The notes beneath the pieces are model-generated. The model did not search any database and was not told where the DNA came from. It saw only the letters and a list, made by a program, of their open reading frames with translations. Positions 8,327 through 30,433 of a stretch of DNA of 64,000 nucleotides are shown in pieces (position 1 is the stretch's first letter; each line of letters opens with the position of its first letter). Made by a program: the position numbers and the translations under genes. Origin of the DNA: Gracilinanus agilis (lineage: Eukaryota); NCBI RefSeq assembly GCF_016433145.1, contig NC_058130.1, positions 86,034,640 to 86,098,639 of the forward strand. Reading direction: 5' to 3'.

Positions 8327-8413
8327 AAGCTAATTTCTCTAGCTCACTTCAGAAAGAAAGCATGCAAAGAAAGCTAATTTCTCTAGCTCACTTCAGAAAG
8401 AAAGCATGAAAGA
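8327..8413. repeat. 44-bp tandem duplication (2 copies)
   Basis: AAGCTAATTTCTCTAGCTCACTTCAGAAAGAAAGCATG(C)AAAGA at 8327-8370 and 8371-8413, differing by one deleted C. Confidence 0.95.
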
Positions 8414-9031
8414 AGTAGTACCTTTTATATGCCAGCAACATTAGTTAATTATTAGTTGGAAATGCATTCTAAACAAAGTATAATTTTATTAAGTCATACG
8501 TCCCAGAATGCCGATTTTTCTTAAGAATGATTGCTGATCATTTAAAGTTACTACCACTTACTGCCTTTTAGGGGAAGGGGAGCTACATGTTAAGGATTTT
8601 TTAAAAACTTCATTTTTGAACTGTCAGCTACAGAATAGTATACAAGTCTACTCTCATTCACAAAAGCAGTATCACAATAAAAACTGCTAATTGTTGCCTA
8701 TTTACTGCATAAAAGACCTTTTAATAATGTAAAGCTTCAATAAAGCTTTGTTTAACTAAAAAAAAGTGCAGAATTGTTTTAATTAATCGAAATGGAATAT
8801 ATAAAATACTGCAACAATTACAATATTCATCTTATGAAATACTAGTGGGCTTTAAAGAACTTGCATATTTGGAGGCACATTTCATGTGACAAGAATGTCT
8901 TTCCTCCATTTCAAAGAAAATTTATGAAACCAATAACTGAAAATGTTTATGAACAAAAATCTAGTTGCTTTTGGTAAACAACAGATAACAAGCAAATTCT
9001 AACACAGCTCGGCAACAATAATGTAGGTAGT

Positions 9032-9037
9032 TTTATT
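9032..9037 (-). terminator. SPCS1 polyadenylation signal AATAAA
   Basis: TTTATT on the plus strand, ~77 nt downstream of the SPCS1 stop codon. Confidence 0.65.
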
Positions 9038-9113
9038 TTGTTGTGGATGTGACAAATCAAGAGATAGTTCACAAAACTGAATGGCTGTCGTAAGGTTGAC
9101 CATATGGCATGTT

Positions 9114-12100
9114 TCAGTTATTTTTAGAATGCCTTTTTATTTTTTTCTCTCCTGGTTTCTTGTCTTCTGATCCCGAGTCTTGAACAGGGAGCCATTTGAG
9201 GGGGTGTCGGCGATATATGGGCCACGGAGGAAGTGTCAGCTTGATGAAGGGAGGGAGAAAATTTATACCTTATATAAAAGTCATATGTTCAAACAACATG
9301 AATCAATGATCTACAGAATTTCTTTACTAACTTGTTACTGATTCCAAGTTTCTGTATTAGAGATATAGCAATATAGATCTCATTTAATAAAGTATAAGAA
9401 GAAAGTTGCTTTTAATGCCTTCTTGACCATAATCAAAGTAATTGATTTTCTATTATTATTATTCTTTGTCTCTGAGGACTATTCCAAACTCTTCTCTCCT
9501 GAACCTCCTATACCACTTCCTATCCCCACCTTCTTAGCAGAAGTCATTGCCTTGTACTTTTAAGAGAAAATAGAAGGCATTTACTATGAGCTCCTTCTCC
9601 CCTATATAGCTTCCATTTTCTTTTACTTGTATGTTTGATCCTATTCCCTCTTGTCTTCTTTGATTGCTCACTATCTTCACAAATTTTAAATTTCTTCTCT
9701 ACTGGTACCTTCCCTGATGCCTCCAAACCTACCCAGGTTTCCCTGTTTAAAAAACAAATCTCATTAAACCACACCATACCCTCAAGGTCCTAAATATTTC
9801 TCCTTCCTTTCATATATTCCTAGAAAAAGCTGTTTATATCCATATCCTCCATACTTTCTTCCAACAACTTGCAATATGGCTTCTAACTTCACAACTAAAA
9901 GTACTCTTCCCCAAGTTGCCAGTGATCTCTTAATTGCCAAATATGATAGCTGCTTCTAATCCTCATTCCATTTAAGGTCACCAGACTAATTGACACTAGT
10001 GACCACTTTATCATTTTGGATACTTCTTCTCTGAGCTTTCAAGGCACTGTTTTCTCTTGGTTCTCCTATCTAACTATTCCTCAGTCTTATCATCATTCTT
10101 ATCTTAATCCTAACTGTGAGGAAATCTCATGGCTGTATGGAAGGCCTTCTTGAATTCTCTGACTTTTTCAGTTCCAAAAGTTCAAATATCATCTCTATGC
10201 AGATGACTCCCAAATCTGTATATAATCATCTTAATCTCTATCTTCATACCACCAACTGCTTACTGGACATTTTGAACAATGACCTGTGGGTATCCTAAAG
10301 TTAGGATGTCCAAAGTAAAACCCATTACCCTTTCTCCCAAAACCAACTCCTTTTTCTCAACTTCCCTGCCTCTGTTGAAGAGGCTACTATTCTCATTACA
10401 TAGGTGTTGTTATGATTAAAATTGATAGACAGATGTAAATAGAAGTATTAATATTTCAATTAAAGCCATGTTGTTAAAAATAAAGATGACCATGCGCCTG
10501 CTAAGATCTAATTCAAATTGCCCGCCATACCTTCTGCCCACCTGGCTCCCTCATATCAAAGAGAGCTCACCTCCAATGCCTCAGGAGTCTTAAACAGTTC
10601 TTTTATGTAGTCACACTTCCTGTCTACCTGCATTATAAGAGGAATCATGGGAAATGTAGTTTCCAAGTCCCCTAACTGGCTACAGGAAGTTTGTCATATA
10701 TCTAAATATTTAAAACTCAAATGAACCCCAAATAACCCTCAAAAGAACCCCCAAAATTCCAAATAACACAGTGTGCAATCTTGATGACATCCTTAACTCT
10801 TCTCAAGACTCCCCAAAAATCTAATCAGTTATCAAATCTTGTCATTTTTGCCTTCATAATAGTGGCACATCTATCCCATTCTTTCCTTTCATACTAGATA
10901 AGGTCCTCATAACAGCCTGTTGGCCTACTGCAATAGCTATCTAATTGATCTCCTCACCTCATCTCCCCTATTCTAATCCAGCCTCCAAATAAATGGCAAA
11001 ACAATATTCCTAAAACACAATCACATCATTGCCCTACTTAAGAACTTCGTGGTTCCCTATGCCCTCTAGAATCAAACAGAGATTCCGCTAGCATTTAACC
11101 ACCTGGTTCTAACCACCTTTTTAATTCTTAAATATCATTTCGCCTCCCTTACTGTACACAACAACATAACCAAATCAGCCTTCTTATTGGTCTTTTTTTC
11201 TATGTAAATTTTACAACTGCTATCCTTTTACCCAAAAAAACGTACATAACTACTGGATCAATTAATGAGCATTTTGGTGAACCTATTACATCCCAGGGAC
11301 CAGGCTAAGCATTAGGGTACAAAGGCAAAAATAGCCTCTGCCTTCAAGGAGTGCAGAATCTGTCCAGGGGAAACAACATGTACATGATAAGCAAGGTAAT
11401 TCTGAGGGGAAGAAACATATGCAAAGGCTTCATGTAAAAGATGGCATTAAAGGAAACTAGGTGAGGCAGTAGATTCTAGTTATAAGGGACAGCCTGTGCA
11501 AAGGCTAGAGATGGAATGGGAAAAGGAGTAGGGAGAGCACAAGAAATCTTTTCCAACCCATAATTTAAAGACCCTTGTCTAGGGTGGGGCTAAGTCTGCT
11601 TTGCCGCTAAAGCACAGCACAGTATTTATGTAACAAGCAGGAATTAAAACATATATGACATTATAATGACAATAAATGGAGATACTGACTGAAGATGACC
11701 AGTAACAAATTTCATCTCTCACTCTTCCATAAGTGCTATAAAATTAAAAAAAAAATTTAAGAACTGGTATAAGATGCCTGGGATCTAAGGAGGCGTTTCT
11801 TACCAAGCATGAAAAAGCAAATCCGGCCATAACAATATAGACCGTCCAACCAAACTGTTCAGCCACATATCCATAGATAAAGCCAATTACCTAGGAGAGA
11901 GACAGGTCTCATTAGGAAAAGCTATGATGAAAAAAGCAAAAATTAAATGACAGATACTTACTGCAGAAAAAAGAATTATTCCCTGAAACATCTGTTCAGC
12001 TAACTTCTGACCCTTATAATCCTAGAGGCATAAAGAAAAAAAAAAAAAAGCAAAATCAACCAGTTCTTCAACAATCCTTCATTTCTACACGATATTTTCA

Positions 12101-12916
12101 TTTTGGATGGTTCTTGCCCCAGATCAGCCTTATTGCTAAATGGCATTCCATCAGGGAACCACTGGAAAAAGGGTGGGGATAGACGGCAGAGAATCTGGGA
12201 GCTTGAACAAAAGCCTAAACAGAGGATGTTCAGGGTAACCAATGCCAAGAGATTAAAGTGTTGAGAGGGGTTGCTAAGAAAGGAAAACGGCAAACTGAAG
12301 CAGCAAACTGAAAAAAGCTACTTCGTTCAGAGATTCACAACTGAGAAAGCATTATAAAAGGAGGGAAAAACCAAAAGACACTGAAGACAGTAGGGGCGGG
12401 GCCAAGTGTTGGGGCTAGAAAGAGCACAGAGAGAAAAGATCCCAGCTGTGACAGCCTGCTCCTCAAAGAGGTCATCCCTCCCACCAGGTCTCAGAAGGAC
12501 CTTTGCACGTTTCAGTGCCCAGGAGAATGTAAGCTCCTCCAGGGCAAGGCCAGCGCTGGGCACACTTTGGGGCGCTTCACAAAAGCTGGCTCTCGCTCAA
12601 CCCCTAGGATTTGTCGCCATAGTACACCACAGAGAGTGGGCGCACTCACCATCTGCGTGGGCAGGGAACTCAGTCCGTCCAATATGATTGCCTTTGGGGG
12701 CCCGCGGCGCTGCAGGGACACTGAGGCACTGCGCTTCGGGGACCCGGACGGGTCGCGGCTGGAGCTGACGAACGAAGAAGGGCCTGACAGAGGAGGAAGC
12801 AGGAGGTCCTGAGCTTGGGACCCAGTGGCGCGGCTCTGGTGCACAGCGAGCCGAATCCCGGAAGCGGATGTCCGGGCAGCGCAAATCGAGGACCCGCTCT
12901 GCCCGCCCCGCCCCAT
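9114..12916 (-). CDS. SPCS1: Signal peptidase complex subunit 1 (SPC12); 4 coding exons, start codon uncertain
   Basis: Exon 1 ends at 12650 (..[11 protein letters not shown]|gtgagt); exon 2 12021-11962 ([20 protein letters not shown]); exon 3 11890-11804 ([29 protein letters not shown]); exon 4 9239-9114 ([16 protein letters not shown]...KRHSKNN*). The position equivalent to the usual Met1 is ATA (12685-12683). In-frame ATGs lie at 12916 (179 aa) and 12652 (91 aa). Confidence 0.95.
9500..11420. mobile_element. L2 LINE fragments in SPCS1 intron 3, interrupted by a solo LTR
   Basis: L2-typical text (ATCATCTCTATGCAGATGACTCCCAAATC, CTACTGCAATAGC, TTAGAACTTCGTGGTTCCC) on both sides of the LTR; boundaries are approximate. 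Confidence 0.65.
10408..10770. mobile_element. Solo ERV LTR, 363 bp
   Basis: TG...CA termini (TGTTATGATT...AATAACACA) with 4-bp TSD GTGT at 10404-10407 and 10771-10774. Confidence 0.65.
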
Positions 12917-13760
12917 CGCTAAGCCACGTGTGACTTCGGGGCTGACTTGGACCAGGCGCGACTGCTGCGCAGGCGGCTGCTGCTGGGACTGCCGGCGGGA
13001 GGCATTTCGTCCTCGGGAAGGAGTTGCCGTCAGTGCTGACTCTAAGCGGGGTGCTGCGGCCCCGGCTACCGGACTCGATCCCGAAAACTACTCAGCGGCC
13101 CAACGGCCACTAGTTCGCGTCACGTTCCCATAGCAACCAGCTCAGTGCTGTTGCGAGGACCCCTGCGGCACGGGCAGCCTAGCACTTCGCCTGCTCGCGC
13201 GGCAGCACTCTTGCTGCCACAACCGCAGTTGCTGGGGCTAGAATGGGTGACGGGAAGGAACTCTTCGATTCTGTAGGTGAGGAAAGGAGACAGCAGGTTC
13301 CGTCCTTCTGACTTAAGAGGTGACCGAAGGAACGGAACCCATCAGGCAATGCCCAGGCCCGCCCCGCACCCTTCTGAGCTGCGAGTGGCGGACTGCAGGC
13401 GCTGAGGTGGCGAAGGCTGGCCTTCGTGCGCGGGGGGCGGGCTGGGGCGGGCCCTGGGCCCTGAAGGGCGGAGCAGGGCTCGGGCTCGAGGGCGGCTCCA
13501 CAGGTCGAAGGTGAGGTTGTGGGCTGGCGTGGCTAGGTCCCTGTAGCAGGCTGGGACCCCGGTTGAGGGCAGTGGTTGGAACGGGCTAGACTCGGGGGAG
13601 AAGGCTGGTAGAGGCACAGCTTGCTCCGCAAGCAAAGGAAGCCTTCCGCGGTTCCTGGGCATCCACGGGGAACGGACTCGTGGCGTCCGAGGAACCCCCG
13701 AAGAGAACCTCCCCTCCCCCTTCGCATCCTACGGGGACTCTCCGTTCCCCAGGCTTGAGG
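12560..13760. promoter_or_regulatory. CpG island / bidirectional promoter of SPCS1 (-) and GLT8D1 (+)
   Basis: CpG-dense and GC-rich. Tandem ETS-like CCGGAAGCGGATGT 12858-12871, GC boxes 12901-12914, E-box CACGTG 12925-12930, X-box GTTCCCATAGCAAC 13124-13137. Candidate GLT8D1 exon-1 donors AG|GTGAGG at 13276/13277 and 13510/13511. Confidence 0.85.
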
Positions 13761-22182: not shown

Positions 22183-24338
22183 GATCTCCCCTCTATAGAC
22201 CTGACTCTCTATCCTCCGAGCCACTTAGCTGCTCCTCCAGGATCATATCTTCATCTGTTTTAACTCAATATGTCCTAAACACTCCCCTTCCTACCTTCTC
22301 TTTTACTGTCAAGGTCAACACCATCCTCCCAGTCACTCAGGCTCACAACCTCCAAATGTCATCCTCAACTTTTCACTGTTCAGCTCCCCTGTATCCAGTC
22401 TTTTGCTCCAGCCTATCTAGTTTACCTTCATAATATCGTTTACATATCCACCCTCCTCTTCCCCTGACACTGCCACCATCCTGGTGTGAGCCCTCACTAC
22501 CATACTGCTAACTATTTGCAATACCTTGCTAGTTGGGTTGATTCTCTGCCTTAAGTCTTTCCCCAGTGCAGTCCAAGCTCAACTCAATCATAAGGGCTAT
22601 CTTCCTAAAGTATAGACCTGACCATGTCGTCCATCTACTTGATAAACCCCAATGACTGCTTATTGCCTTCAGGATCAATTCAAAGCCCTTTAGAACCTAC
22701 CTTCTCACCCTACCCCCACCCCATTTTCCCAGTATTCTTATACCTTTCTCTTATGATCTGGTAGCACTAGCCTCTTTCCTATTTCTGAACAAGACATTCC
22801 AACTCCAGACTATTCATTTTTGCTGGATGTTTCCCATGCCTGGCATGCTCTTTCCCTCTTCATCTCCACCTCTGGGCTTCCTTCTGGTCCCAGATAAAAT
22901 TCCACCCTCTTCAGGAAGCCTTTCCCATCCCCCTTAATCCTAGAGCCTTCCCTATTTTCCTCTTATCCTGCATATATCTTGTTTGTACATAGTTATTTAT
23001 ATATTGCCTCCTCGATTGGATAGTGAGCTCCTGAAGAGCAAAGACTGCCTTTTGCTTTTTTGCTTTGTTTTCTTTATGTCCTCAGCACTTGACATATGGC
23101 CTGGCATATAGTAGTAGGTGCTTAGTACGAGTTTTTGACTGATTTTGTATATATTGAGTTTGAGATCCCTAGGAAACATACAGATGGAAAATGCCTATTA
23201 GATAGTTGGATATGTGGGGATGAGAGTTTAAGAGTGAGAAGTGGGCTGGATATGTAGATTTGGGAATCATCTGCTGTGAAAATGATTATTAAATATGCGG
23301 GAACTGATGAAATCTAAATTAGAACTTAGATAGAAGAGAGTACCCAAAGTGGAGCCTTGGAGTATCCCCTATATATGAAATAATACAAAAGATACTGAAA
23401 AGGAACAATAAGATAGGAAGAAAAACCCCAAGATTTTGTAGTTGCTTGATAAGGGATAAGCAATCTCCTCACTCCCATAATACTTTGTTTATATTCTTGT
23501 ATTAATCATGTATTGCCCTTATAGTTATTTGTGATTATGTCTTGCTCCCCATGTTGTGAGCTCCATGAATGTACCTTGGTTCCTAATCCAATCTCCAACT
23601 GATCCTGGCATAGAGCAGGTACATAATGTTGAGGGGAATGCTGGAAACAAAAGTAAAAAATACGTAAACCAGAAGCTCCATCTTCAGCCATATGATAAGC
23701 TGGTTCCAAAACTATCATAGCAACAGAATTCATTAGTTCATAAGGAAGAATTATCATGCTTTCCCAATCTAAGTATATCAGCATCTGGAATTTTTTTGAA
23801 TTTATTTTCCTCCTCTCTACCACACCTACTCCTTCCATAATTTTCTGTTTGATTCATAGGTTCATCTCCTTTCCTATGATTGGGGAGAGGGGTGGTTTCA
23901 GGGGATAGTTGTAAGGGAGTAACACTCCAACAGTGCCTAAACCATGATTACTGGCTTAGTAGCTCCTATTGACTTAATTGGGTGGGAGTTTCCTGAAGGC
24001 TGACAGAACATATAACAGAATTGTACTTCTGTGGCACTATAAAGGAGAGGACTGGGGATTTTAAGGTAAGTGTAATATAATACCAAAAAATACTGTGAAT
24101 TGCTTGATATTGGCATGCTTTTATTTTTTGTTTGACTTTGCCATTGTAGCAGTACTTCAAGTTCATACTTAGATATTAGATTATTTATTATAATATCATG
24201 AGTTAGAATCTTTACTACTAAACTTCATGGAAATGCCACCATAAAATTTAGCTGTTATGACTAGGTGCACACAGTGACTTTGGAATGTTTTTCTCTTGCA
24301 GGTTTTTAAAGTCATATTCTTTTAAGGCTGAAAGGAAA

Positions 24339-27300
24339 ATGTCATTCCGTAAAGGTATATGCTTTCTCCAAGTTGTAGCTTTTTAGAATTGGTTAAATGA
24401 CAAAGAAAAAAATTAATTTTTTCTCTTTTTTTTTTAGTGAACATCATCATCCTAGTTCTTGCTGTCACTCTCTTTCTGCTAGTTTTGCATCATAACTTCC
24501 TTGGTCTGAGTGATTTGTTGAAAAGGGAGGTCTCAGGTACAGTGACCCTAATTGGTCCTTATAAAGTAAATCACAACTCTGACTGCCATTCTCTTTCATT
24601 GTCATAGTGGATTAAAAGATGATAAATGTAGATCTTTAACCTTTTACTTCCTTTGTGGAGAGGGAAGGGTAAGGAAGAGAAAACTTTTGTTATTGTAGAA
24701 GATCTTAAACACTTTGAGAAGAAAAAAGGAGGGAGGTCCACTCTCTTTTTCATAGCCTTGGTTTCCTTAGCTTTAAAATGGGAGTGTTTTCTATCTCATA
24801 TTGTGAGAAAAGTGCTTTGCAAATTTGAAGGTACTACATGTGTATTAATAGGTATAGGATTGTTATCCGATTGCTAGCATAGACTTGCAGCATAGCAACA
24901 CCCTCAGCACAATCTCAAGTCCACTGAAATCCATTGTCCACACTCCTTTCTCTTTGGGCTTGGAGGACTGATGCTTTAGAACAGTGATTGGGAACCTTTT
25001 AGAGATGGAATGTTGGGCCCCATCCCACCCCTCAGACTGTGTGCCCAGCCTCTCCCCTCACCCCATACAGGGAAGGGAGGAAGTACTCTCATTGGACTGC
25101 TTAGCAGAGGGGCAAGTGAAGGGAGGAATGTCCTTAGTGAGTGTAGAGAGGAGGGGAGTGGCCCGAGCACTCCACACCACTCCAGCTCTGCCACCTGTGA
25201 GCTGGCCACCTTACTCATGTGCGTTCCTATTGGGCTGTGGGCAGAGGGGAGGGATATGTGAAAAACTGTCTTTAAGTGTGGTGAAGAGGGGGAGGGGAAC
25301 AGCTCCACCCAAGTCCCCCTGCCTTTCTAGAAATTAATTCTGGAGGGGAGAGCAGAGGGCAGCCCTGTGCCCACAGAGAGCACTCTGTATGCCATTTTTG
25401 GCACCCTAGGTTCACTATCACTGCTTTAGAATGTTAGAGGCATAAAAAAGAAAGAATAAGAAAAAAAAGAGAACAAGATTACTGTAACAACCTACAGAAA
25501 GGTTTTATGGCATTTGTCATTCCTTTTCCTCTTGTCTTCTACACTTTTTCATTTCCAGTGGTTTTGACCATTCTTGTTACCTTTTATCATTCTTTCTTCC
25601 CTCTGCAGATCCAAATCTTGTGGGATTTCAGCCACTAGCGTTTGTGCCTAATGCCCCTAAAAGCTTGCTCTCTAGGAGTGAAGAGGAGATTCCAGTAGTC
25701 ATTGCAGCTTCTGAAGACAGACTTGGGGGCACAATTGCAGTGATGAATAGTATTTACCATCATACTCACTCCAATGTGGTTTTCTACATTGTTACTTTGA
25801 ATGATACTGCAGACCATCTCAGGTAAGTTTGTCTCAATTCTTCATACCATGCAACATGGGAAATAGAATCAGGAAGACCTGGAAGGCCTTACAACTTAAT
25901 GCAATAGGAAAAGAGTTTTCCCCCAAGGAAAAACTTGTATTAAATTTAAAAAAGTTTAAAAAGTTTAAAAGCTCATCTGAGTTCAAAAATGTTTCGGGGG
26001 CAGCTGGGTAGCTCAGTGGATTGAGAGCCAGCCCTAGAGACAGGAGGTCCTGGATTCAAATCTGGCCTTAGACACTTCCCAGCTGTGTGACCCTGGGCAA
26101 GTCACTTGACCCCCGTTGCCCACCCTTACCACTCTTCTGCCTTGGAGCCAATACACAGAAGTTAAGGGTTTTAAAAAAAAAGTTTCACTACCTTACTCTC
26201 CAAAGGTAGCTGTTTCTAGTTATTTCCTCACTATAATCCAGTGCTAAGATATAGTACAAAATAAGCAAACAGGTCAGACATGTGATCTATCTACCTAGCC
26301 TCACAGCTGCTCTTGGAAGGTTCTTATACAGGACTTCTAAGTCCAAATCCTTCAGTCTTGCCACTGTCATAGCCACTCTTTACAATGATGTTTGGGGGCT
26401 TTTCTTCCTATCCCTATTGACCCCGTGGACCCCAGCCCAGCCCGGAAACAAATAAAACTTTAAAACTATGAAAATTACATAACTAAGGGCCCAGAGCAAA
26501 CTATGTACACCATACATGTAGTTAGACTCTTCTTTGGGGACTAGACACTTTGGCACACAGTTTTTCCTGAGTTAGAAAATTGAGGAGACAGTGTGTTGAG
26601 TATATAGAGGAAAAAATGAATTGGTGGTTTCTTTCCCCACCCCAAAATTCTTAGTTTTAACATTGCCTCAGTTTCCCCCTGTACCCCTTCCTCTCTCAGA
26701 ATAAACCCATATATTAAAAATAAACCATCTTCAGTAAAATTACTGATCAATACAGAGGCTGCCACACACAATGCTCCATACCCATGGAACCACTCCTCCT
26801 CACCCTCACCCCACCCCATGCTATTTCTGCAAAGGAATACGGACATATTAGTTCTTTGGGACCAAATTTGTTCTCTGCAGTTTTAAAAGTATTTTATATT
26901 GTTTTGGTTGTTCTTTTTATTTACATTGCTGTATGTATTGTGTGCTCTGTTTACTTTATCATTTCATGTCTTATAACATGCTTCTCTGTATTTGCCTATT
27001 TTCACAGCACCATAATGGTCTGTTGCATTTATGTACTGCAAATTTAGCACACCCTCCCTCCCTTTCAAGTTGTTGATTCATTTTCAGATAAAGCTGAGCC
27101 CCTCATTTTAAAGAAAAATGATACCTATAGAGGGGAAGCTACTGGAACACTCACTTGGTAAGGCAATGTGAGTGGAACTGGAGGAACCTTGTTTTTCTCA
27201 ACTCCAGTGCACCTCATTGGCTGTGTCCTTGGATGAGGTCTCAGAGCTTGCTCTGACCAGAATTTTCCCATGGGACTTGTCAAATTTTAGACTCGGAGAC

Positions 27301-29911
27301 TTGCAGATGTCTTTAGTGGAGGAATCAGCATATTTCAGCATAGCATTGGCTGCAGTAAAATTACAAGAGCTGAACACCAGATTCATGGCATCATAGATGA
27401 AGAGTTAGAAGGGGACTCTCACTTTATAGAAAAATGAAGCCCAGAGAAGGGTTGCCCCAGCTGACAAAAGGTACCAAGCATCAGAGATGGGATTGGAGCC
27501 CAAGAATCAGTGCTCTTCTGCCTATGCCTCTCCTACTAAGAATATTAAATATTAAGAATATTTTCTACATGGGAACCCCTGGCACTTCCTCAGGACTCTA
27601 TACAGTAAGTAGGTAAACAATATTGTGTCCCTCAATTCTTCCTGCACAGGCCAATAGAATATACACTGAAATACTTGGTGCTAAGTTGTCTAACAACACT
27701 TTTTTTTTTAAATTGAAACATGATTATTTATATCCCAAGACTGACATAACATTTGATGCTTTACTCTGGTCAGATCCTGGCTTAGCAGTGATTCTCTAAA
27801 AAGCATCCAGTACAAAATTGTGGATTTCAACCCTCAGTGCTTGGAAGGGAAAGTAAAAGTGGATCCTAAACAGGGGGACTTCTTGAAGCCAGTGAGTACT
27901 GTCCATCATTTATGTTTCAAAGCTGGTACACAGTAAAAATATTTTGGCTGGGGAGGTATACAACAAAGGGTGCTTAGGGATTCTCTTTTAATAGTATAAG
28001 TCTAAAGAAGTTGCCAAAGACTGTGTACATCAGTGTGTATACATGTCATGATTATGACGTGGGCAGCTTTCTGTAGACAACCATCTCTAGACCACTGCAC
28101 AAAGATCTATTAAACCTGTTTTATCTAGGTCTAGGAAATTAAAGCATTCAGCTTTTAAAGTGCTATGTAAATATGTATTTGCAAGCCAAATAACATTTCT
28201 TCTTTTAACAGTTAACTTTTGCAAGATTCTACCTGCCTAACTTGGTTCCCAATGCGAAAAAAGCAATATATATGGATGATGATGTTATAGTACAAGGTAC
28301 TTTTTTTCCCCTTCATGTTCTCAACCTTTATCCATCTAACTGAACTCGTCTTAAATTTAAACAGTGAGTGGAAATGACTCATTTTCATTGAAATCTTAGT
28401 GCATTCAAGGCTTCTCAAGGCATCTTTTTACTCTTCCAGGTGATATTCTTGCCCTTTATAATACACCTTTGAAGCCTGGGCATGCAGCTGCTTTTTCAGA
28501 AGACTGTGATTCAACTTCTGCTAAAGTTATTGTCCATGGAGCAGGGAATCAGGTGAATCATCCTTATCCAAATATATTCCCTACTTTTCACACATAGCTT
28601 TAATTATTAGGACCAGTGTCAATGAAGAGCTCTAAGCAAAATTATCTGGTTCTTTAAATGCATGTTTATGCTGTCCTCTCTGCAGACTTCAAAAATAACC
28701 ATCACAGCACAGGTAAGTTGCTCAGTGAATAAAGCTAGGTCTGGAGACATGAGGTCCTTGGTTCGAATTTGGTTTCAGACACAGCTGTGTGACCCTGGAC
28801 AAGTCATTTAACTGCCATTGTTTAGTCCTTATCACTCTTCTGCCTTTGATCCAGTACTAAATATTAATTCTAAGACAGATCAGGGTTCTTTAAAAAAAAC
28901 AAATCACCAAAATTAAAGCTAATCTGTTAGGTTCATTTTCTGTCCTATTTTCTACCTTTTTCATTAAAATATTTTGGTGTCTATAATTATCAGTAATTGT
29001 TTAGAGAGCTGTTTCTTTCATCCCAATACAGAAGTGCATTCTCAGGAACAAAACATTCCATGTTAATTTGAGGCTTGCCTATAAAGTATTTCAACAATGT
29101 AGCTGTCAGTTTTGATTCCTTTTGATCCTTTTTGTGGGTTGGGGCAGTGATTAGCAGCTTGAAAAATCATCAATTTTTTGCACACACAAAACTTGTTCTG
29201 TTTAAAAATTAAACTGTGCATTTTGATTCTGTTCATAGTATAATTATGTTGGATTTCTGGACTATAAGAAAAAAAGGATTCGAAATCTTGCCATGAAAGC
29301 TAGCACCTGCTCTTTTAATCCTGGGGTTTTTGTTGCAAATTTAACAGAATGGAAACAACAGAACATTACTTACCAGCTGGAAAAGTGGATGAAACTTAAT
29401 GTAGAGTAAGTATAGAAAGACAGTTTGTTAAAAAGAGTTGCAGTGAGCATTTAATTAATTCAAAATCTGGGGCTTCATTAGCATACTACTGTAATGGCCT
29501 TTTTATTTGTCCCTCCAGAGAAGAATTATATAGTAGGACGTTGGCTGGCAGCATTACAACACCTCCTCTACTTATAGTGTTTTATAAACAGCATTCAAAT
29601 ATTGATCCCATGTGGAATGTTCGACACCTTGGTAAGTAATCAAATAATTTTAAAATTTTAGAACACAGGACACTAAGCATATCTTTAGAATTACTAACAA
29701 TTTCTTATTATTAATGGAAGGTTCTAGTGCAGGAAAACGATATTCACCGCAGTTTGTGAAGGCTGCTAAACTCCTACATTGGAATGGACACTTCAAGCCA
29801 TGGGGAAGAACTGCTGCTTATGCTAACATTTGGGAAAAATGGTATATTCCAGATCCAACAGGAAAATTCAGCCTAATCCGAAGACATGGAGACATTGCAA
29901 ATGCAGTGTAA
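24339..29911 (+). CDS. GLT8D1: Glycosyltransferase 8 domain-containing protein 1 (371 aa, complete, 9 coding exons)
   Basis: Coding exons 24339-24354, 24438-24536, 25609-25822, 27774-27891, 28212-28296, 28440-28552, 29239-29405, 29519-29631, 29721-29911. All GT-AG, 1116 nt in total. MSFRKVNIIILVLAV signal-anchor, MDDDVIVQ DxD motif, LLHWNGHFKPW motif. Confidence 0.97.
24982..25423. mobile_element. Non-autonomous hAT element, 442 bp (OposCharlie-like TIRs)
   Basis: TIRs CAGTGATTGGGAACCT / AGGTTCACTATCACTG; perfect 8-bp TSD CTTTAGAA (24974-24981, 25424-25431). Confidence 0.9.
25996..26182 (+). mobile_element. Marsupial SINE (SINE1_Mdo-like)
   Basis: GGGGCAGCTGGGTAGCTCAGTGG (Pol III A box), GGATTCAAATC (B box), TGTGTGACCCTGGGCAAGTCAC core, A tail. 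Confidence 0.9.
28710..28900 (+). mobile_element. Older marsupial SINE
   Basis: GCTCAGTG...GGTTCGAAT...TGTGTGACCCTGGACAAGTCATTTAAC core with A-rich end. Confidence 0.75.
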
Positions 29912-30433
29912 AGTAGAATACAGACTACCATTCTTTTCTCAGGAAACACTGACAGTCGGTATTTAGTTGGGAAAATGTCTTATGTGTAATGGTGAGAATT
30001 TTCATGGTGAAACACAGGAAAACCAACTTACAGCAGCTACCATACCCAATTATTATGAAGTTCTCCAACATCATCCCAACTAGAATATGAAAACACTTTA
30101 TATCTGCCTTACTTGAGAAAAAGTATTTTGCTAATTATATTGCTACTACAGAGAGAATTTTGACAAGCAGAAGTGAATGATGTGCCTTCCCCTTCTAGGA
30201 CTGATGAGCCATCTTGCAGTTAAATGCTGTTTTTTTGTTTTACTTCTATAACCTGTGGCTTTGTTTGACACTTTACTTTGCATGAAACCCACTTGAAGCA
30301 TGTTTACATTCTATTAACTTAGTTTAAAATACACTACCAGTTATGGTTTCTTTCAAAAAGTTACACCTCTTATTTTTGCCTTAGTTAAAGTTCCCCAATA
30401 CTATTTAAAGATGGTTTTTCATTTTGTTCCAAA

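What the first reader, a model, noticed from the sequence alone, without database searches (positions are those of the whole stretch)
12650..12916. SPCS1 canonical start ATG is ATA here; an in-frame upstream ATG would give a 179-aa N-extended protein
Seen: exon 1 reads GCAATC ATA TTG GAC GGA CTG AGT TCC CTG CCC ACG CAG ATG|gt. Counting from ATA (12685) gives exactly 102 codons, the length of the usual SPCS1 ([12 protein letters not shown]...), so ATA occupies the Met1 position. The frame stays open back to an ATG in strong Kozak context (gcgATGg, 12916). Recalled: human SPCS1 has a longer 169-aa form starting MARGG...TSASG, resembling MGRGG...TSASG here. Inference: this lineage uses the long form, the downstream ATG at 12652 (91 aa), or near-cognate AUA initiation. 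Caveat: the conserved GGGGCGGGG and CTTCCGG stretches are also Sp1 and ETS sites, so the peptide similarity may be a by-product of promoter conservation.
Basis: partly seen in the sequence, partly recalled or inferred. Interest (0 to 1): 0.7.

Follow-up and report, generated by a model that had tools for sequence, protein, structure and literature searches.

The report
Opossum SPCS1 lost its usual start codon
In this opossum-family genome the normally invariant first ATG of the housekeeping gene SPCS1 is ATA, a real change shared by American opossums, so the protein must start at an upstream or a downstream ATG in the same exon, and which one could not be settled here.

Summary
SPCS1 lies on the minus strand in four exons. 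The codon at the Met1 position is ATA (12685-12683). Codon counts are 102 from ATA, 179 from ATG 12916 and 91 from ATG 12652.

It is not an assembly slip. Monodelphis and Gracilinanus models also carry Ile there. All 117 other tetrapod SPCS1 proteins listed keep Met, including four Australian marsupials.

The upstream ATG is homologous to the start of the human 169-aa form. NCBI already models a 179-aa Monodelphis protein.

The 77-codon extension shows no protein-level constraint:
- Substitutions fall 21/18/18 by codon position.
- dN/dS is 0.76, like the other five frames.
- Only the Sp1 and ETS boxes are conserved.
- The upstream ATG is lost in 15 therian clusters.

By contrast, codons 2-12 have not changed in three opossum genera (P=0.007). 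This suggests they are still translated.

Best guess (0.45): the 179-aa form supplies them. Rivals are a 91-aa protein from Met12 and near-cognate initiation.

The transcription start could not be tested.

The parts
12914..12916 (-). Upstream in-frame ATG (gcgATGg), start of the 179-codon reading. It is homologous to the start of the human 169-aa form and lies inside the GC box.
12686..12913 (-). 76 codons of the N-terminal extension, or 5' leader. S/P/G/R-rich with no Pfam hit. Evolves without frame-specific constraint.
12902..12914 (-). GGGGCGGGGCGGG, an Sp1-type GC box. It reads as G-R-G-G and is conserved from marsupials to eutherians.
12857..12872 (-). GACATCCGCTTCCGGG, an ETS-type box that reads as T-S-A-S-G. 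Near-invariant in all 7 aligned sequences.
12683..12685 (-). ATA (Ile) at the position of the canonical Met1. The preceding codon is ATC, where Australian marsupials have GTC.
12650..12652 (-). ATG of Met12, the last codon of exon 1 and the first ATG in any frame downstream of 12916. The donor GT follows at 12649-12648.
11962..12021 (-). SPCS1 exon 2 (20 codons). The SPC12 domain starts here.
11804..11890 (-). SPCS1 exon 3 (29 codons).
9114..9239 (-). SPCS1 exon 4 coding part (41 codons plus TGA).
12919..13005 (-). Candidate upstream ORF in frame +1: ATG 13005, 28 codons, TAG 12921-12919, ending 2 nt before ATG 12916.
12917..13087 (.). Highly conserved stretch upstream of the ATG (82-89% identical to Antechinus). 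Bounded by the in-frame TAG at 13090-13088. Shows an unexplained 3-periodic substitution pattern.

Best explanation
The ATG-to-ATA change is a real substitution, fixed in American opossums (Didelphidae) after their split from Australian marsupials. It sits in an otherwise intact, syntenic, functional SPCS1 gene.

It is tolerated because exon 1 carries two other in-frame AUGs. My preferred reading is that transcripts starting upstream of 12916 are translated from the strong-context AUG at 12916 into a 179-aa protein.

In that protein the 77-residue extension is an unconstrained, probably disordered cytosolic tail. Its DNA also serves as the Sp1/ETS promoter of the SPCS1-GLT8D1 pair. The extension simply delivers the still-conserved residues 2-12 and the SPC12 core.

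On this view Met1 and the upstream AUG are redundant starts in therians. Many eutherians and the wombat lost the upstream one and kept Met1. Opossums lost Met1 and kept the upstream one.

Shown here: the substitution and its lineage distribution, the homology of the upstream ATG, the lack of protein-level constraint on the extension, and the frozen codons 2-12.

Inferred: that the upstream AUG is on the mRNA and is used.
For: - Ile at the Met1 position occurs in the window, Monodelphis (P0001/P0002) and Gracilinanus (P0004). Met occurs in all 117 other tetrapod proteins listed.
- The upstream ATG and an intact frame of identical length (89 codons in exon 1) are shared by the window and Monodelphis.
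- The context has G at -3 and G at +4.
- Codons 2-12 plus the five codons before them show 0 amino-acid changes among three opossum genera. The adjacent 43 extension positions took about 18 changes. This gives P(0)=0.007 for 12 sites and 0.0008 for 17 sites.
- The human SPC structure preprint reports residues 1-65 of the 169-residue numbering as flexible, so the ordered part starts about at Met1 (residue 68 in that numbering). The recombinant long form assembles into active complex.
- The upstream ATG is replaced in 15 therian clusters, all of which keep Met1.
- Eutherian RNA contigs run through the upstream-ATG position.
Against: - No read-level evidence for the transcription start.
- The extension evolves like non-coding DNA. 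Substitutions fall 21/18/18 by codon position and dN/dS is 0.76 against 0.57-0.86 in the other five frames, while real exons give 1/1/6. Eutherian pairs behave the same way.
- The only conserved blocks are the GC box and the ETS box, about 40 nt apart. That layout is typical of elements lying just upstream of a CpG-island start site, which would leave ATG 12916 off the main mRNA.
- DNA upstream of the ATG is more conserved than the extension.
- The Gracilinanus model is in another frame upstream of its residue 57. The upstream ATG may therefore be out of frame in an opossum that also lacks Met1, though that model is flagged LOW QUALITY.
- From my own knowledge, not checked here: the subunit purified from dog pancreas runs at 12 kDa, the size of the 102-aa form, in a species that has both ATGs.
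- The eutherian RNA contigs are unstranded. One of them (L002) is fused with antisense GLT8D1, so they do not prove sense transcription of the ATG.
Confidence: 0.45

Rival explanations
1. The main transcription start lies downstream of the ETS box. ATG 12916 is then promoter DNA, and the first AUG on the mRNA is Met12 (12652). Opossum SPCS1 would be a 91-aa protein lacking the first 11 residues but keeping the whole SPC12 core.
For: - No ATG in any frame lies between 12916 and 12652.
- The Pfam SPC12 profile begins at exon 2, with the exon 2 peptide matching from profile position 2.
- The extension has no coding signature, and its only conserved blocks are the GC and ETS boxes.
- Identity to Antechinus drops from 81-87% to 58-69% just after 12826, as expected past a start site.
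- The Gracilinanus model changes frame in the extension.
Against: - Codons 2-12 and the five codons before them are unchanged in three opossum genera, while the neighbouring extension changed at 0.42 per site. That is hard to explain if they were only 5' UTR.
- This segment is ordered in the human complex according to the structure preprint.
- The Met12 context is weaker (C at -3).
Confidence: 0.25
2. Translation starts at a near-cognate codon at or next to the old start. The candidates are the AUC-AUA-UUG cluster at 12688-12680, where UUG has A at -3 and G at +4. This would give a protein of about 101-103 aa like the canonical one, with leaky scanning to Met12.
For: - Three consecutive in-frame near-cognate codons are present. 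AUA has A at -3 because the preceding codon changed from GTC to ATC, and UUG has the optimal -3A/+4G context.
- This explains the conservation of codons 2-12 and of the five upstream codons, as start context, without needing the extension.
- It is independent of the frame of the extension, so it is compatible with the Gracilinanus model.
Against: - From general knowledge: AUA, AUC and UUG are among the weakest initiators, a few per cent of AUG. That is a poor fit for an abundant housekeeping protein.
- There is no ribosome-profiling or peptide evidence.
- The same UUG context exists in marsupials that keep AUG, so nothing about it is specific to opossums.
Confidence: 0.13
3. Sequencing or assembly error: the true base at 12683 is G and the gene is ordinary.
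Against: Ile at the same position, together with the same neighbouring Val-to-Ile change, appears in independent assemblies of Monodelphis and Gracilinanus.
Confidence: 0.02

Closest known systems
Human SPCS1 169-residue form (UniProt Q9Y6A9-1; chain D of PDB 7P2P/7P2Q)
   Same: The upstream in-frame ATG is homologous and lies in the same GC box (M-x-R-G-G), followed by the same T-S-A-S-G block. The extension is of similar length (67 versus 77 residues) and joins the same core.
   Different: Human keeps the internal Met that starts the 102-aa form, so both products are possible. Here that codon is ATA. Outside the two boxes the extensions are unrelated.
NCBI model 'signal peptidase complex subunit 1 isoform X2' of Monodelphis domestica (P0001, 179 aa)
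   Same: Same length, the same Ile at the Met1 position, and 88% identity over exon 1. The long reading is therefore already in a public annotation.
   Different: It is a different species (11 residue differences, all in the first 64 residues). The model is a longest-ORF prediction, not evidence of the start actually used.
Classical 102-aa SPC12/SPCS1 of eutherians, amphibians and others (e.g. P0069, P0088)
   Same: Exons 2-4 and residues 2-12 are nearly identical. Counting from ATA gives exactly 102 codons.
   Different: Those proteins start with Met at the position that is Ile here.
Start-codon turnover and alternative N-terminal proteoforms (in-frame upstream or downstream AUGs, near-cognate starts such as in EIF4G2 or PTEN-L; from general knowledge)
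   Same: A conserved gene with several in-frame starts in one exon, where lineages keep different ones.
   Different: No translation data exist here. The extension shows none of the coding conservation used to support the known extended proteoforms.

Membership tests
SPC12 / SPCS1 (Pfam PF06645), orthologue of vertebrate SPCS1 | SPC12 domain present and intact | tested here: met
   Exons 2, 3 and 4 were scanned separately and hit PF06645 at profile positions 2-21, 22-50 and 51-70. Exons 3 and 4 score above the curated cut-off; the 20-residue exon 2 piece scores 20.7 bits, below the 23.6-bit cut-off. The frame is intact and substitutions versus Antechinus fall 1/1/6 by codon position.
SPC12 / SPCS1 (Pfam PF06645), orthologue of vertebrate SPCS1 | Conserved synteny (GLT8D1 head-to-head, kinase gene tail-to-tail) | tested here: met
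GLT8D1 coding exons lie on the + strand at 24297-29946. In Antechinus a protein-kinase gene converges on the 3' end.
SPC12 / SPCS1 (Pfam PF06645), orthologue of vertebrate SPCS1 | Met at the canonical start, 12 residues before D-Y-K-G-Q | tested here: not met
   The codon is ATA here. Met is present in 117 of 117 non-didelphid proteins listed. This is the finding itself and does not affect orthology.
Translated N-terminally extended SPCS1 proteoform | Upstream in-frame AUG homologous to the human one, with no stop before the core | tested here: met
Translated N-terminally extended SPCS1 proteoform | The AUG lies on the mature mRNA (start site upstream of 12916) | not testable with these tools
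Translated N-terminally extended SPCS1 proteoform | Protein-level constraint on the extension (codon periodicity, low dN/dS in this frame only) | tested here: not met
   Substitutions fall 21/18/18 by codon position. dN/dS is 0.76 against 0.57-0.86 in the other frames. Eutherian pairs show no periodicity either. Only the two transcription-factor boxes are conserved.
Translated N-terminally extended SPCS1 proteoform | Peptide or ribosome-footprint evidence | not testable with these tools
   No such data are within reach. Paper searches found none.
Non-AUG initiated protein | Near-cognate codon in strong context at the conserved start | tested here: inconclusive
   AUA has -3A/+4U, UUG has -3A/+4G and AUC has -3G/+4A. 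Context alone proves nothing.
Regulatory upstream ORF | Upstream AUG and reading frame conserved across lineages | tested here: inconclusive
   The ATG at 13005 is kept in all 7 aligned sequences. The ORF is 87/87/90/90/90/75/81 nt long, always a multiple of 3. However, the block is conserved DNA anyway, and sense transcription is unproven.

The most novel reading that the evidence does not exclude
Start choice in therian SPCS1 may be gated by a conserved 28-codon upstream ORF (ATG 13005 to TAG 12919) that ends 2 nt before the upstream AUG. Ribosomes that translate it would skip that AUG and reinitiate about 230 nt downstream at Met1. That would explain a 12-kDa product even from long leaders. 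In opossums Met1 is gone, so reinitiation would land on the AUC-AUA-UUG cluster or on Met12. Opossum SPCS1 would then be either a non-AUG-initiated protein or a naturally N-truncated one.
Probability: 0.13. Interest if true: 0.65.

Novelty: new member of a known kind. Interest (0 to 1): 0.4.

Why it matters
Two lengths of SPCS1 are in use. Databases and the cryo-EM work use a 169-residue human form. Much of the virology and biochemistry literature uses 102 residues. I found no paper that settles which start is used in cells.

American opossums are a natural knock-out of the 102-residue start in an otherwise intact, essential gene. A blot, a 5'-end map or one ribosome-profiling experiment on opossum tissue would therefore show directly whether the long form is made and is sufficient. 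If it is not, the same experiment would show whether the first 11 residues are dispensable or a non-AUG start is used.

The case also warns about annotation. The only conserved 'peptide' blocks of the extension are a GC box and an ETS box.

Tried and rejected
- **Reads.** I laid runs X1-X4 on window 8400-13600. There is therefore no check of the base or of transcript 5' ends. Local scripts used only 12100 upward, or exons 2 and 4. The later word searches used a Monodelphis database protein with the scored region set outside the homologous residues. The contig look-ups used database proteins of other species.
- **Orthologous DNA.** Five of six marsupial look-ups gave no DNA: one was not on record and four had a file too large. 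Only Antechinus came back. Synonymous changes within didelphids could therefore not be counted.
- **Didelphid RNA-derived products.** I looked for them (91-aa or partial) in the protein collection and found none. This says nothing either way.
- **Papers.** Six searches and several reads found no statement on which SPCS1 start is used, and none on opossums.
- **Frame openness as evidence for coding.** Rejected, because all three frames are open in the window.
- **ATG depletion in the leader.** Not significant.
- **Pseudogene.** Rejected: introns, synteny and purifying selection on exons 2 and 4 are all present.
- **Joined protein.** I did not build or search the joined spliced protein. Exons were handled one by one, by reference.
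- **Possible human material.** I did not fetch contigs of cluster P0034. Its residues before Met1 match the human chain, so it may be human or primate.

Full report
**What is there**

On the minus strand the window reads GCA ATC ATA TTG GAC GGA CTG AGT TCC CTG CCC ACG CAG ATG followed by GTGAGT. ATA is at 12685-12683. The ATG at 12652-12650 is the last codon of the exon.

An ATG at 12916-12914 lies in gcgATGg. It is in frame with no stop down to the exon end. The frame is open upstream as far as a TAG at 13090-13088.

A motif scan and direct reading located the other exons at 12021-11962, 11890-11804 and 9239-9117, with TGA at 9116-9114. Scanned separately, they match consecutive parts of Pfam SPC12. 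Exon 2 scores just under the curated cut-off. Exon 1 hits nothing.

The codon counts per exon are 12 or 89 or 1, then 20, 29 and 41. They give 102, 179 and 91 residues for the three candidate starts. All searches were made exon by exon or with database proteins. The window contains no N.

**It is the real gene and a real substitution**

- GLT8D1 coding exons lie on the other strand at 24.3-29.9 kb.
- In Antechinus a kinase gene converges on the 3' end.
- Against Antechinus, exons 2 and 4 differ at 1/1/6 sites by codon position, as expected under purifying selection.

A word search with the exon 1 reading frame found NCBI models of 179-188 residues in marsupials. The closest is Monodelphis domestica, at 88% identity over exon 1.

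In the alignment the three American opossums (window, Monodelphis, Gracilinanus) read A-I-I-L-D-G-L-S-S. Antechinus, Trichosurus, Notamacropus and Petaurus read A-V-M-L-D-G-L-S-S.

A wider search listed 120 SPCS1 proteins from amphibians to eutherians. Every one of the 117 non-didelphid proteins has Met twelve residues before D-Y-K-G-Q.

The change is therefore lineage-wide in Didelphidae, and Met1 is invariant elsewhere in this sample. An assembly error in this window is very unlikely, although I could not look at reads.

The look-up of sequencing runs returned one run holding 87% of the sampled words (probably the source DNA). Three small runs of the same organism and study held 26-29%, about the exonic share, which suggests RNA.

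My single read-laying run covered 8400-13600.

The transcription start, the decisive fact, therefore stays untested.

**The long form is already annotated**

- The PDB chain of human SPCS1 aligns M-A-R-G-G...T-S-A-S-G with M-G-R-G-G...T-S-A-S-G here.
- The structure preprint built the subunit from UniProt Q9Y6A9-1 with 169 residues. It reports residues 1-65 as flexible.
- Another paper numbers the protein to 102.
- Long models of 159-280 residues exist for many mammals, birds and reptiles.

**Is the extension a protein?**

The evidence says it is not a conserved one.

- Against Antechinus the 228 nt between the two starts are 75% identical. Differences fall 21/18/18 by codon position.
- Nei-Gojobori dN/dS is 0.76 in the SPCS1 frame and 0.57-0.86 in the other five frames.
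- Four eutherian RNA contigs show the same lack of periodicity.
- In 22 therian sequences the only conserved columns before Met1 are M-x-R-G-G and T-S-A-S-G. These are the GC box 12914-12902 and the CTTCCGG box 12872-12857. The rest is unalignable and in eutherians rich in Cys and Trp.
- The 170 nt upstream of the ATG are more conserved (82-89%) than the extension.
- In the window none of the three frames has a stop across the extension, so an open frame means little.
- The upstream ATG is ACG, AGG, GTG or another codon in 15 therian clusters. These include the wombat, cattle, whales, several bats and the guinea pig. All of them keep Met1.

The two indels between window and Antechinus inside the extension are 3 and 6 nt. 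That is weak evidence for frame keeping.

**Evidence that something upstream of Met12 is still translated in opossums**

Among the window, Monodelphis and Gracilinanus, the 43 extension positions before P-P-K-A took about 18 amino-acid changes (0.42 per site). The 12 codons from ATA to Met12 took none, and neither did the five before them. This gives P=0.007 and 0.0008 respectively.

These residues are as frozen as in lineages where they are certainly coding. According to the preprint, they begin the ordered part of the subunit.

The constraint could in principle be on the RNA (splice donor, context of Met12). Without didelphid DNA I could not separate synonymous from other changes.

**The Gracilinanus model**

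It is flagged LOW QUALITY and starts in an exon about 33 kb away. It matches the window's frame -1 at its residues 48-56 and frame 0 from residue 57 on.

Either that genome has a length change of about 13 nt that is not a multiple of three, which would put the upstream ATG out of frame, or the model is an artefact. I count it as weak evidence against the long form.

**Weighing**

If the GC and ETS boxes lie just upstream of the main start site, as their spacing and the drop in conservation after 12826 suggest, ATG 12916 is not on the main mRNA. The first AUG is then Met12.

If start sites are spread further upstream, the strong-context ATG 12916 would capture scanning ribosomes. Spread start sites are common in bidirectional CpG islands. 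They are also hinted at by a eutherian RNA contig that fuses spliced GLT8D1 and SPCS1 head to head.

The frozen codons 2-12 favour a start at or above the ATA. My odds:

| Reading | Probability |
|---|---|
| Long form from ATG 12916 | 0.45 |
| Met12 start (91 aa) | 0.25 |
| Near-cognate start at the AUC-AUA-UUG cluster | 0.13 |
| Assembly error | 0.02 |
| Mixtures or other | remainder |

**Seen in passing**

An ATG at 13005 in another frame is kept in all seven aligned sequences. It opens an ORF whose length is always a multiple of three. In five of the seven aligned sequences (four lineages: the two marsupials, the L002/L003 species and L006) this ORF ends at a TAG 2 nt before the upstream ATG position.

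The stretch 13087-12917 shows differences of 2/8/15 by phase (P=0.006). dN/dS is 0.25 in the SPCS1 frame and 0.14 in a plus-strand frame without any Met. Eutherian pairs show only a faint trend of the same kind. I cannot explain this.

**Novelty and verdict**

The long reading is already in public annotation, and start-codon turnover is a known kind of event. Within the papers I could search, I found no description of the loss of the otherwise invariant Met1 in opossums, or of its use as a natural test of which SPCS1 start matters.

The finding is real, modestly interesting and unresolved as to mechanism.

Noticed in passing
window 12919-13005 (minus strand, frame +1 relative to SPCS1): Candidate upstream ORF. 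The ATG at 13005 is conserved in the window, Antechinus and five eutherian RNA contigs. The ORF length is always a multiple of 3 (87/87/90/90/90/75/81 nt). Its stop TAG lies 2 nt before the upstream SPCS1 ATG position in five of the seven aligned sequences. The encoded peptide is not conserved.
   Followed up: partly
window 12917-13087: The DNA upstream of ATG 12916 is more conserved than the extension. It differs from Antechinus at 2/8/15 sites by phase (P=0.006). dN/dS is 0.25 in the SPCS1 frame and 0.14 in the plus-strand frame of ORF 12825-13133, which has no Met. Eutherian pairs show only a faint trend. Unexplained and possibly chance.
   Followed up: partly
L002 1-2973 (Logan RNA contig of a eutherian): One contig carries spliced GLT8D1 (435-residue call) on one strand and spliced SPCS1 (224-residue call) on the other, 193 nt apart. 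The two mRNAs therefore overlap at their 5' ends in that species. Long SPCS1 'ORFs' called on such unstranded contigs are not evidence of sense transcription.
   Followed up: partly
proteins P0009, P0012, P0014, P0018-P0022, P0038, P0053, P0060, P0062, P0066, P0068, P0125: The ATG that starts the long form is replaced (T, R, V, L, I or G at that position) in 15 therian clusters, including the wombat, cattle, sheep, toothed whales, bats and the guinea pig. All of them keep Met1.
   Followed up: yes
protein P0004 (Gracilinanus agilis, LOW QUALITY PROTEIN): The model spans 36 kb with a far-upstream first exon. It switches from the window's frame -1 to frame 0 inside the extension. This is either a length change of about 13 nt (not a multiple of three) in that genome or a model artefact.
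   Followed up: partly
window 24297-29946 (+ strand): GLT8D1 coding exons, found by local blastn with the eutherian contig. The first coding exon lies about 11 kb from the shared CpG island (12.3-14 kb, GC 0.54-0.66).
   Followed up: no
protein P0002 (Monodelphis isoform X1, 188 aa) and window just past exon 3: The isoform X1 model reads through the exon 3 donor into the intron. It is probably an intron-retention model of no consequence.
   Followed up: no
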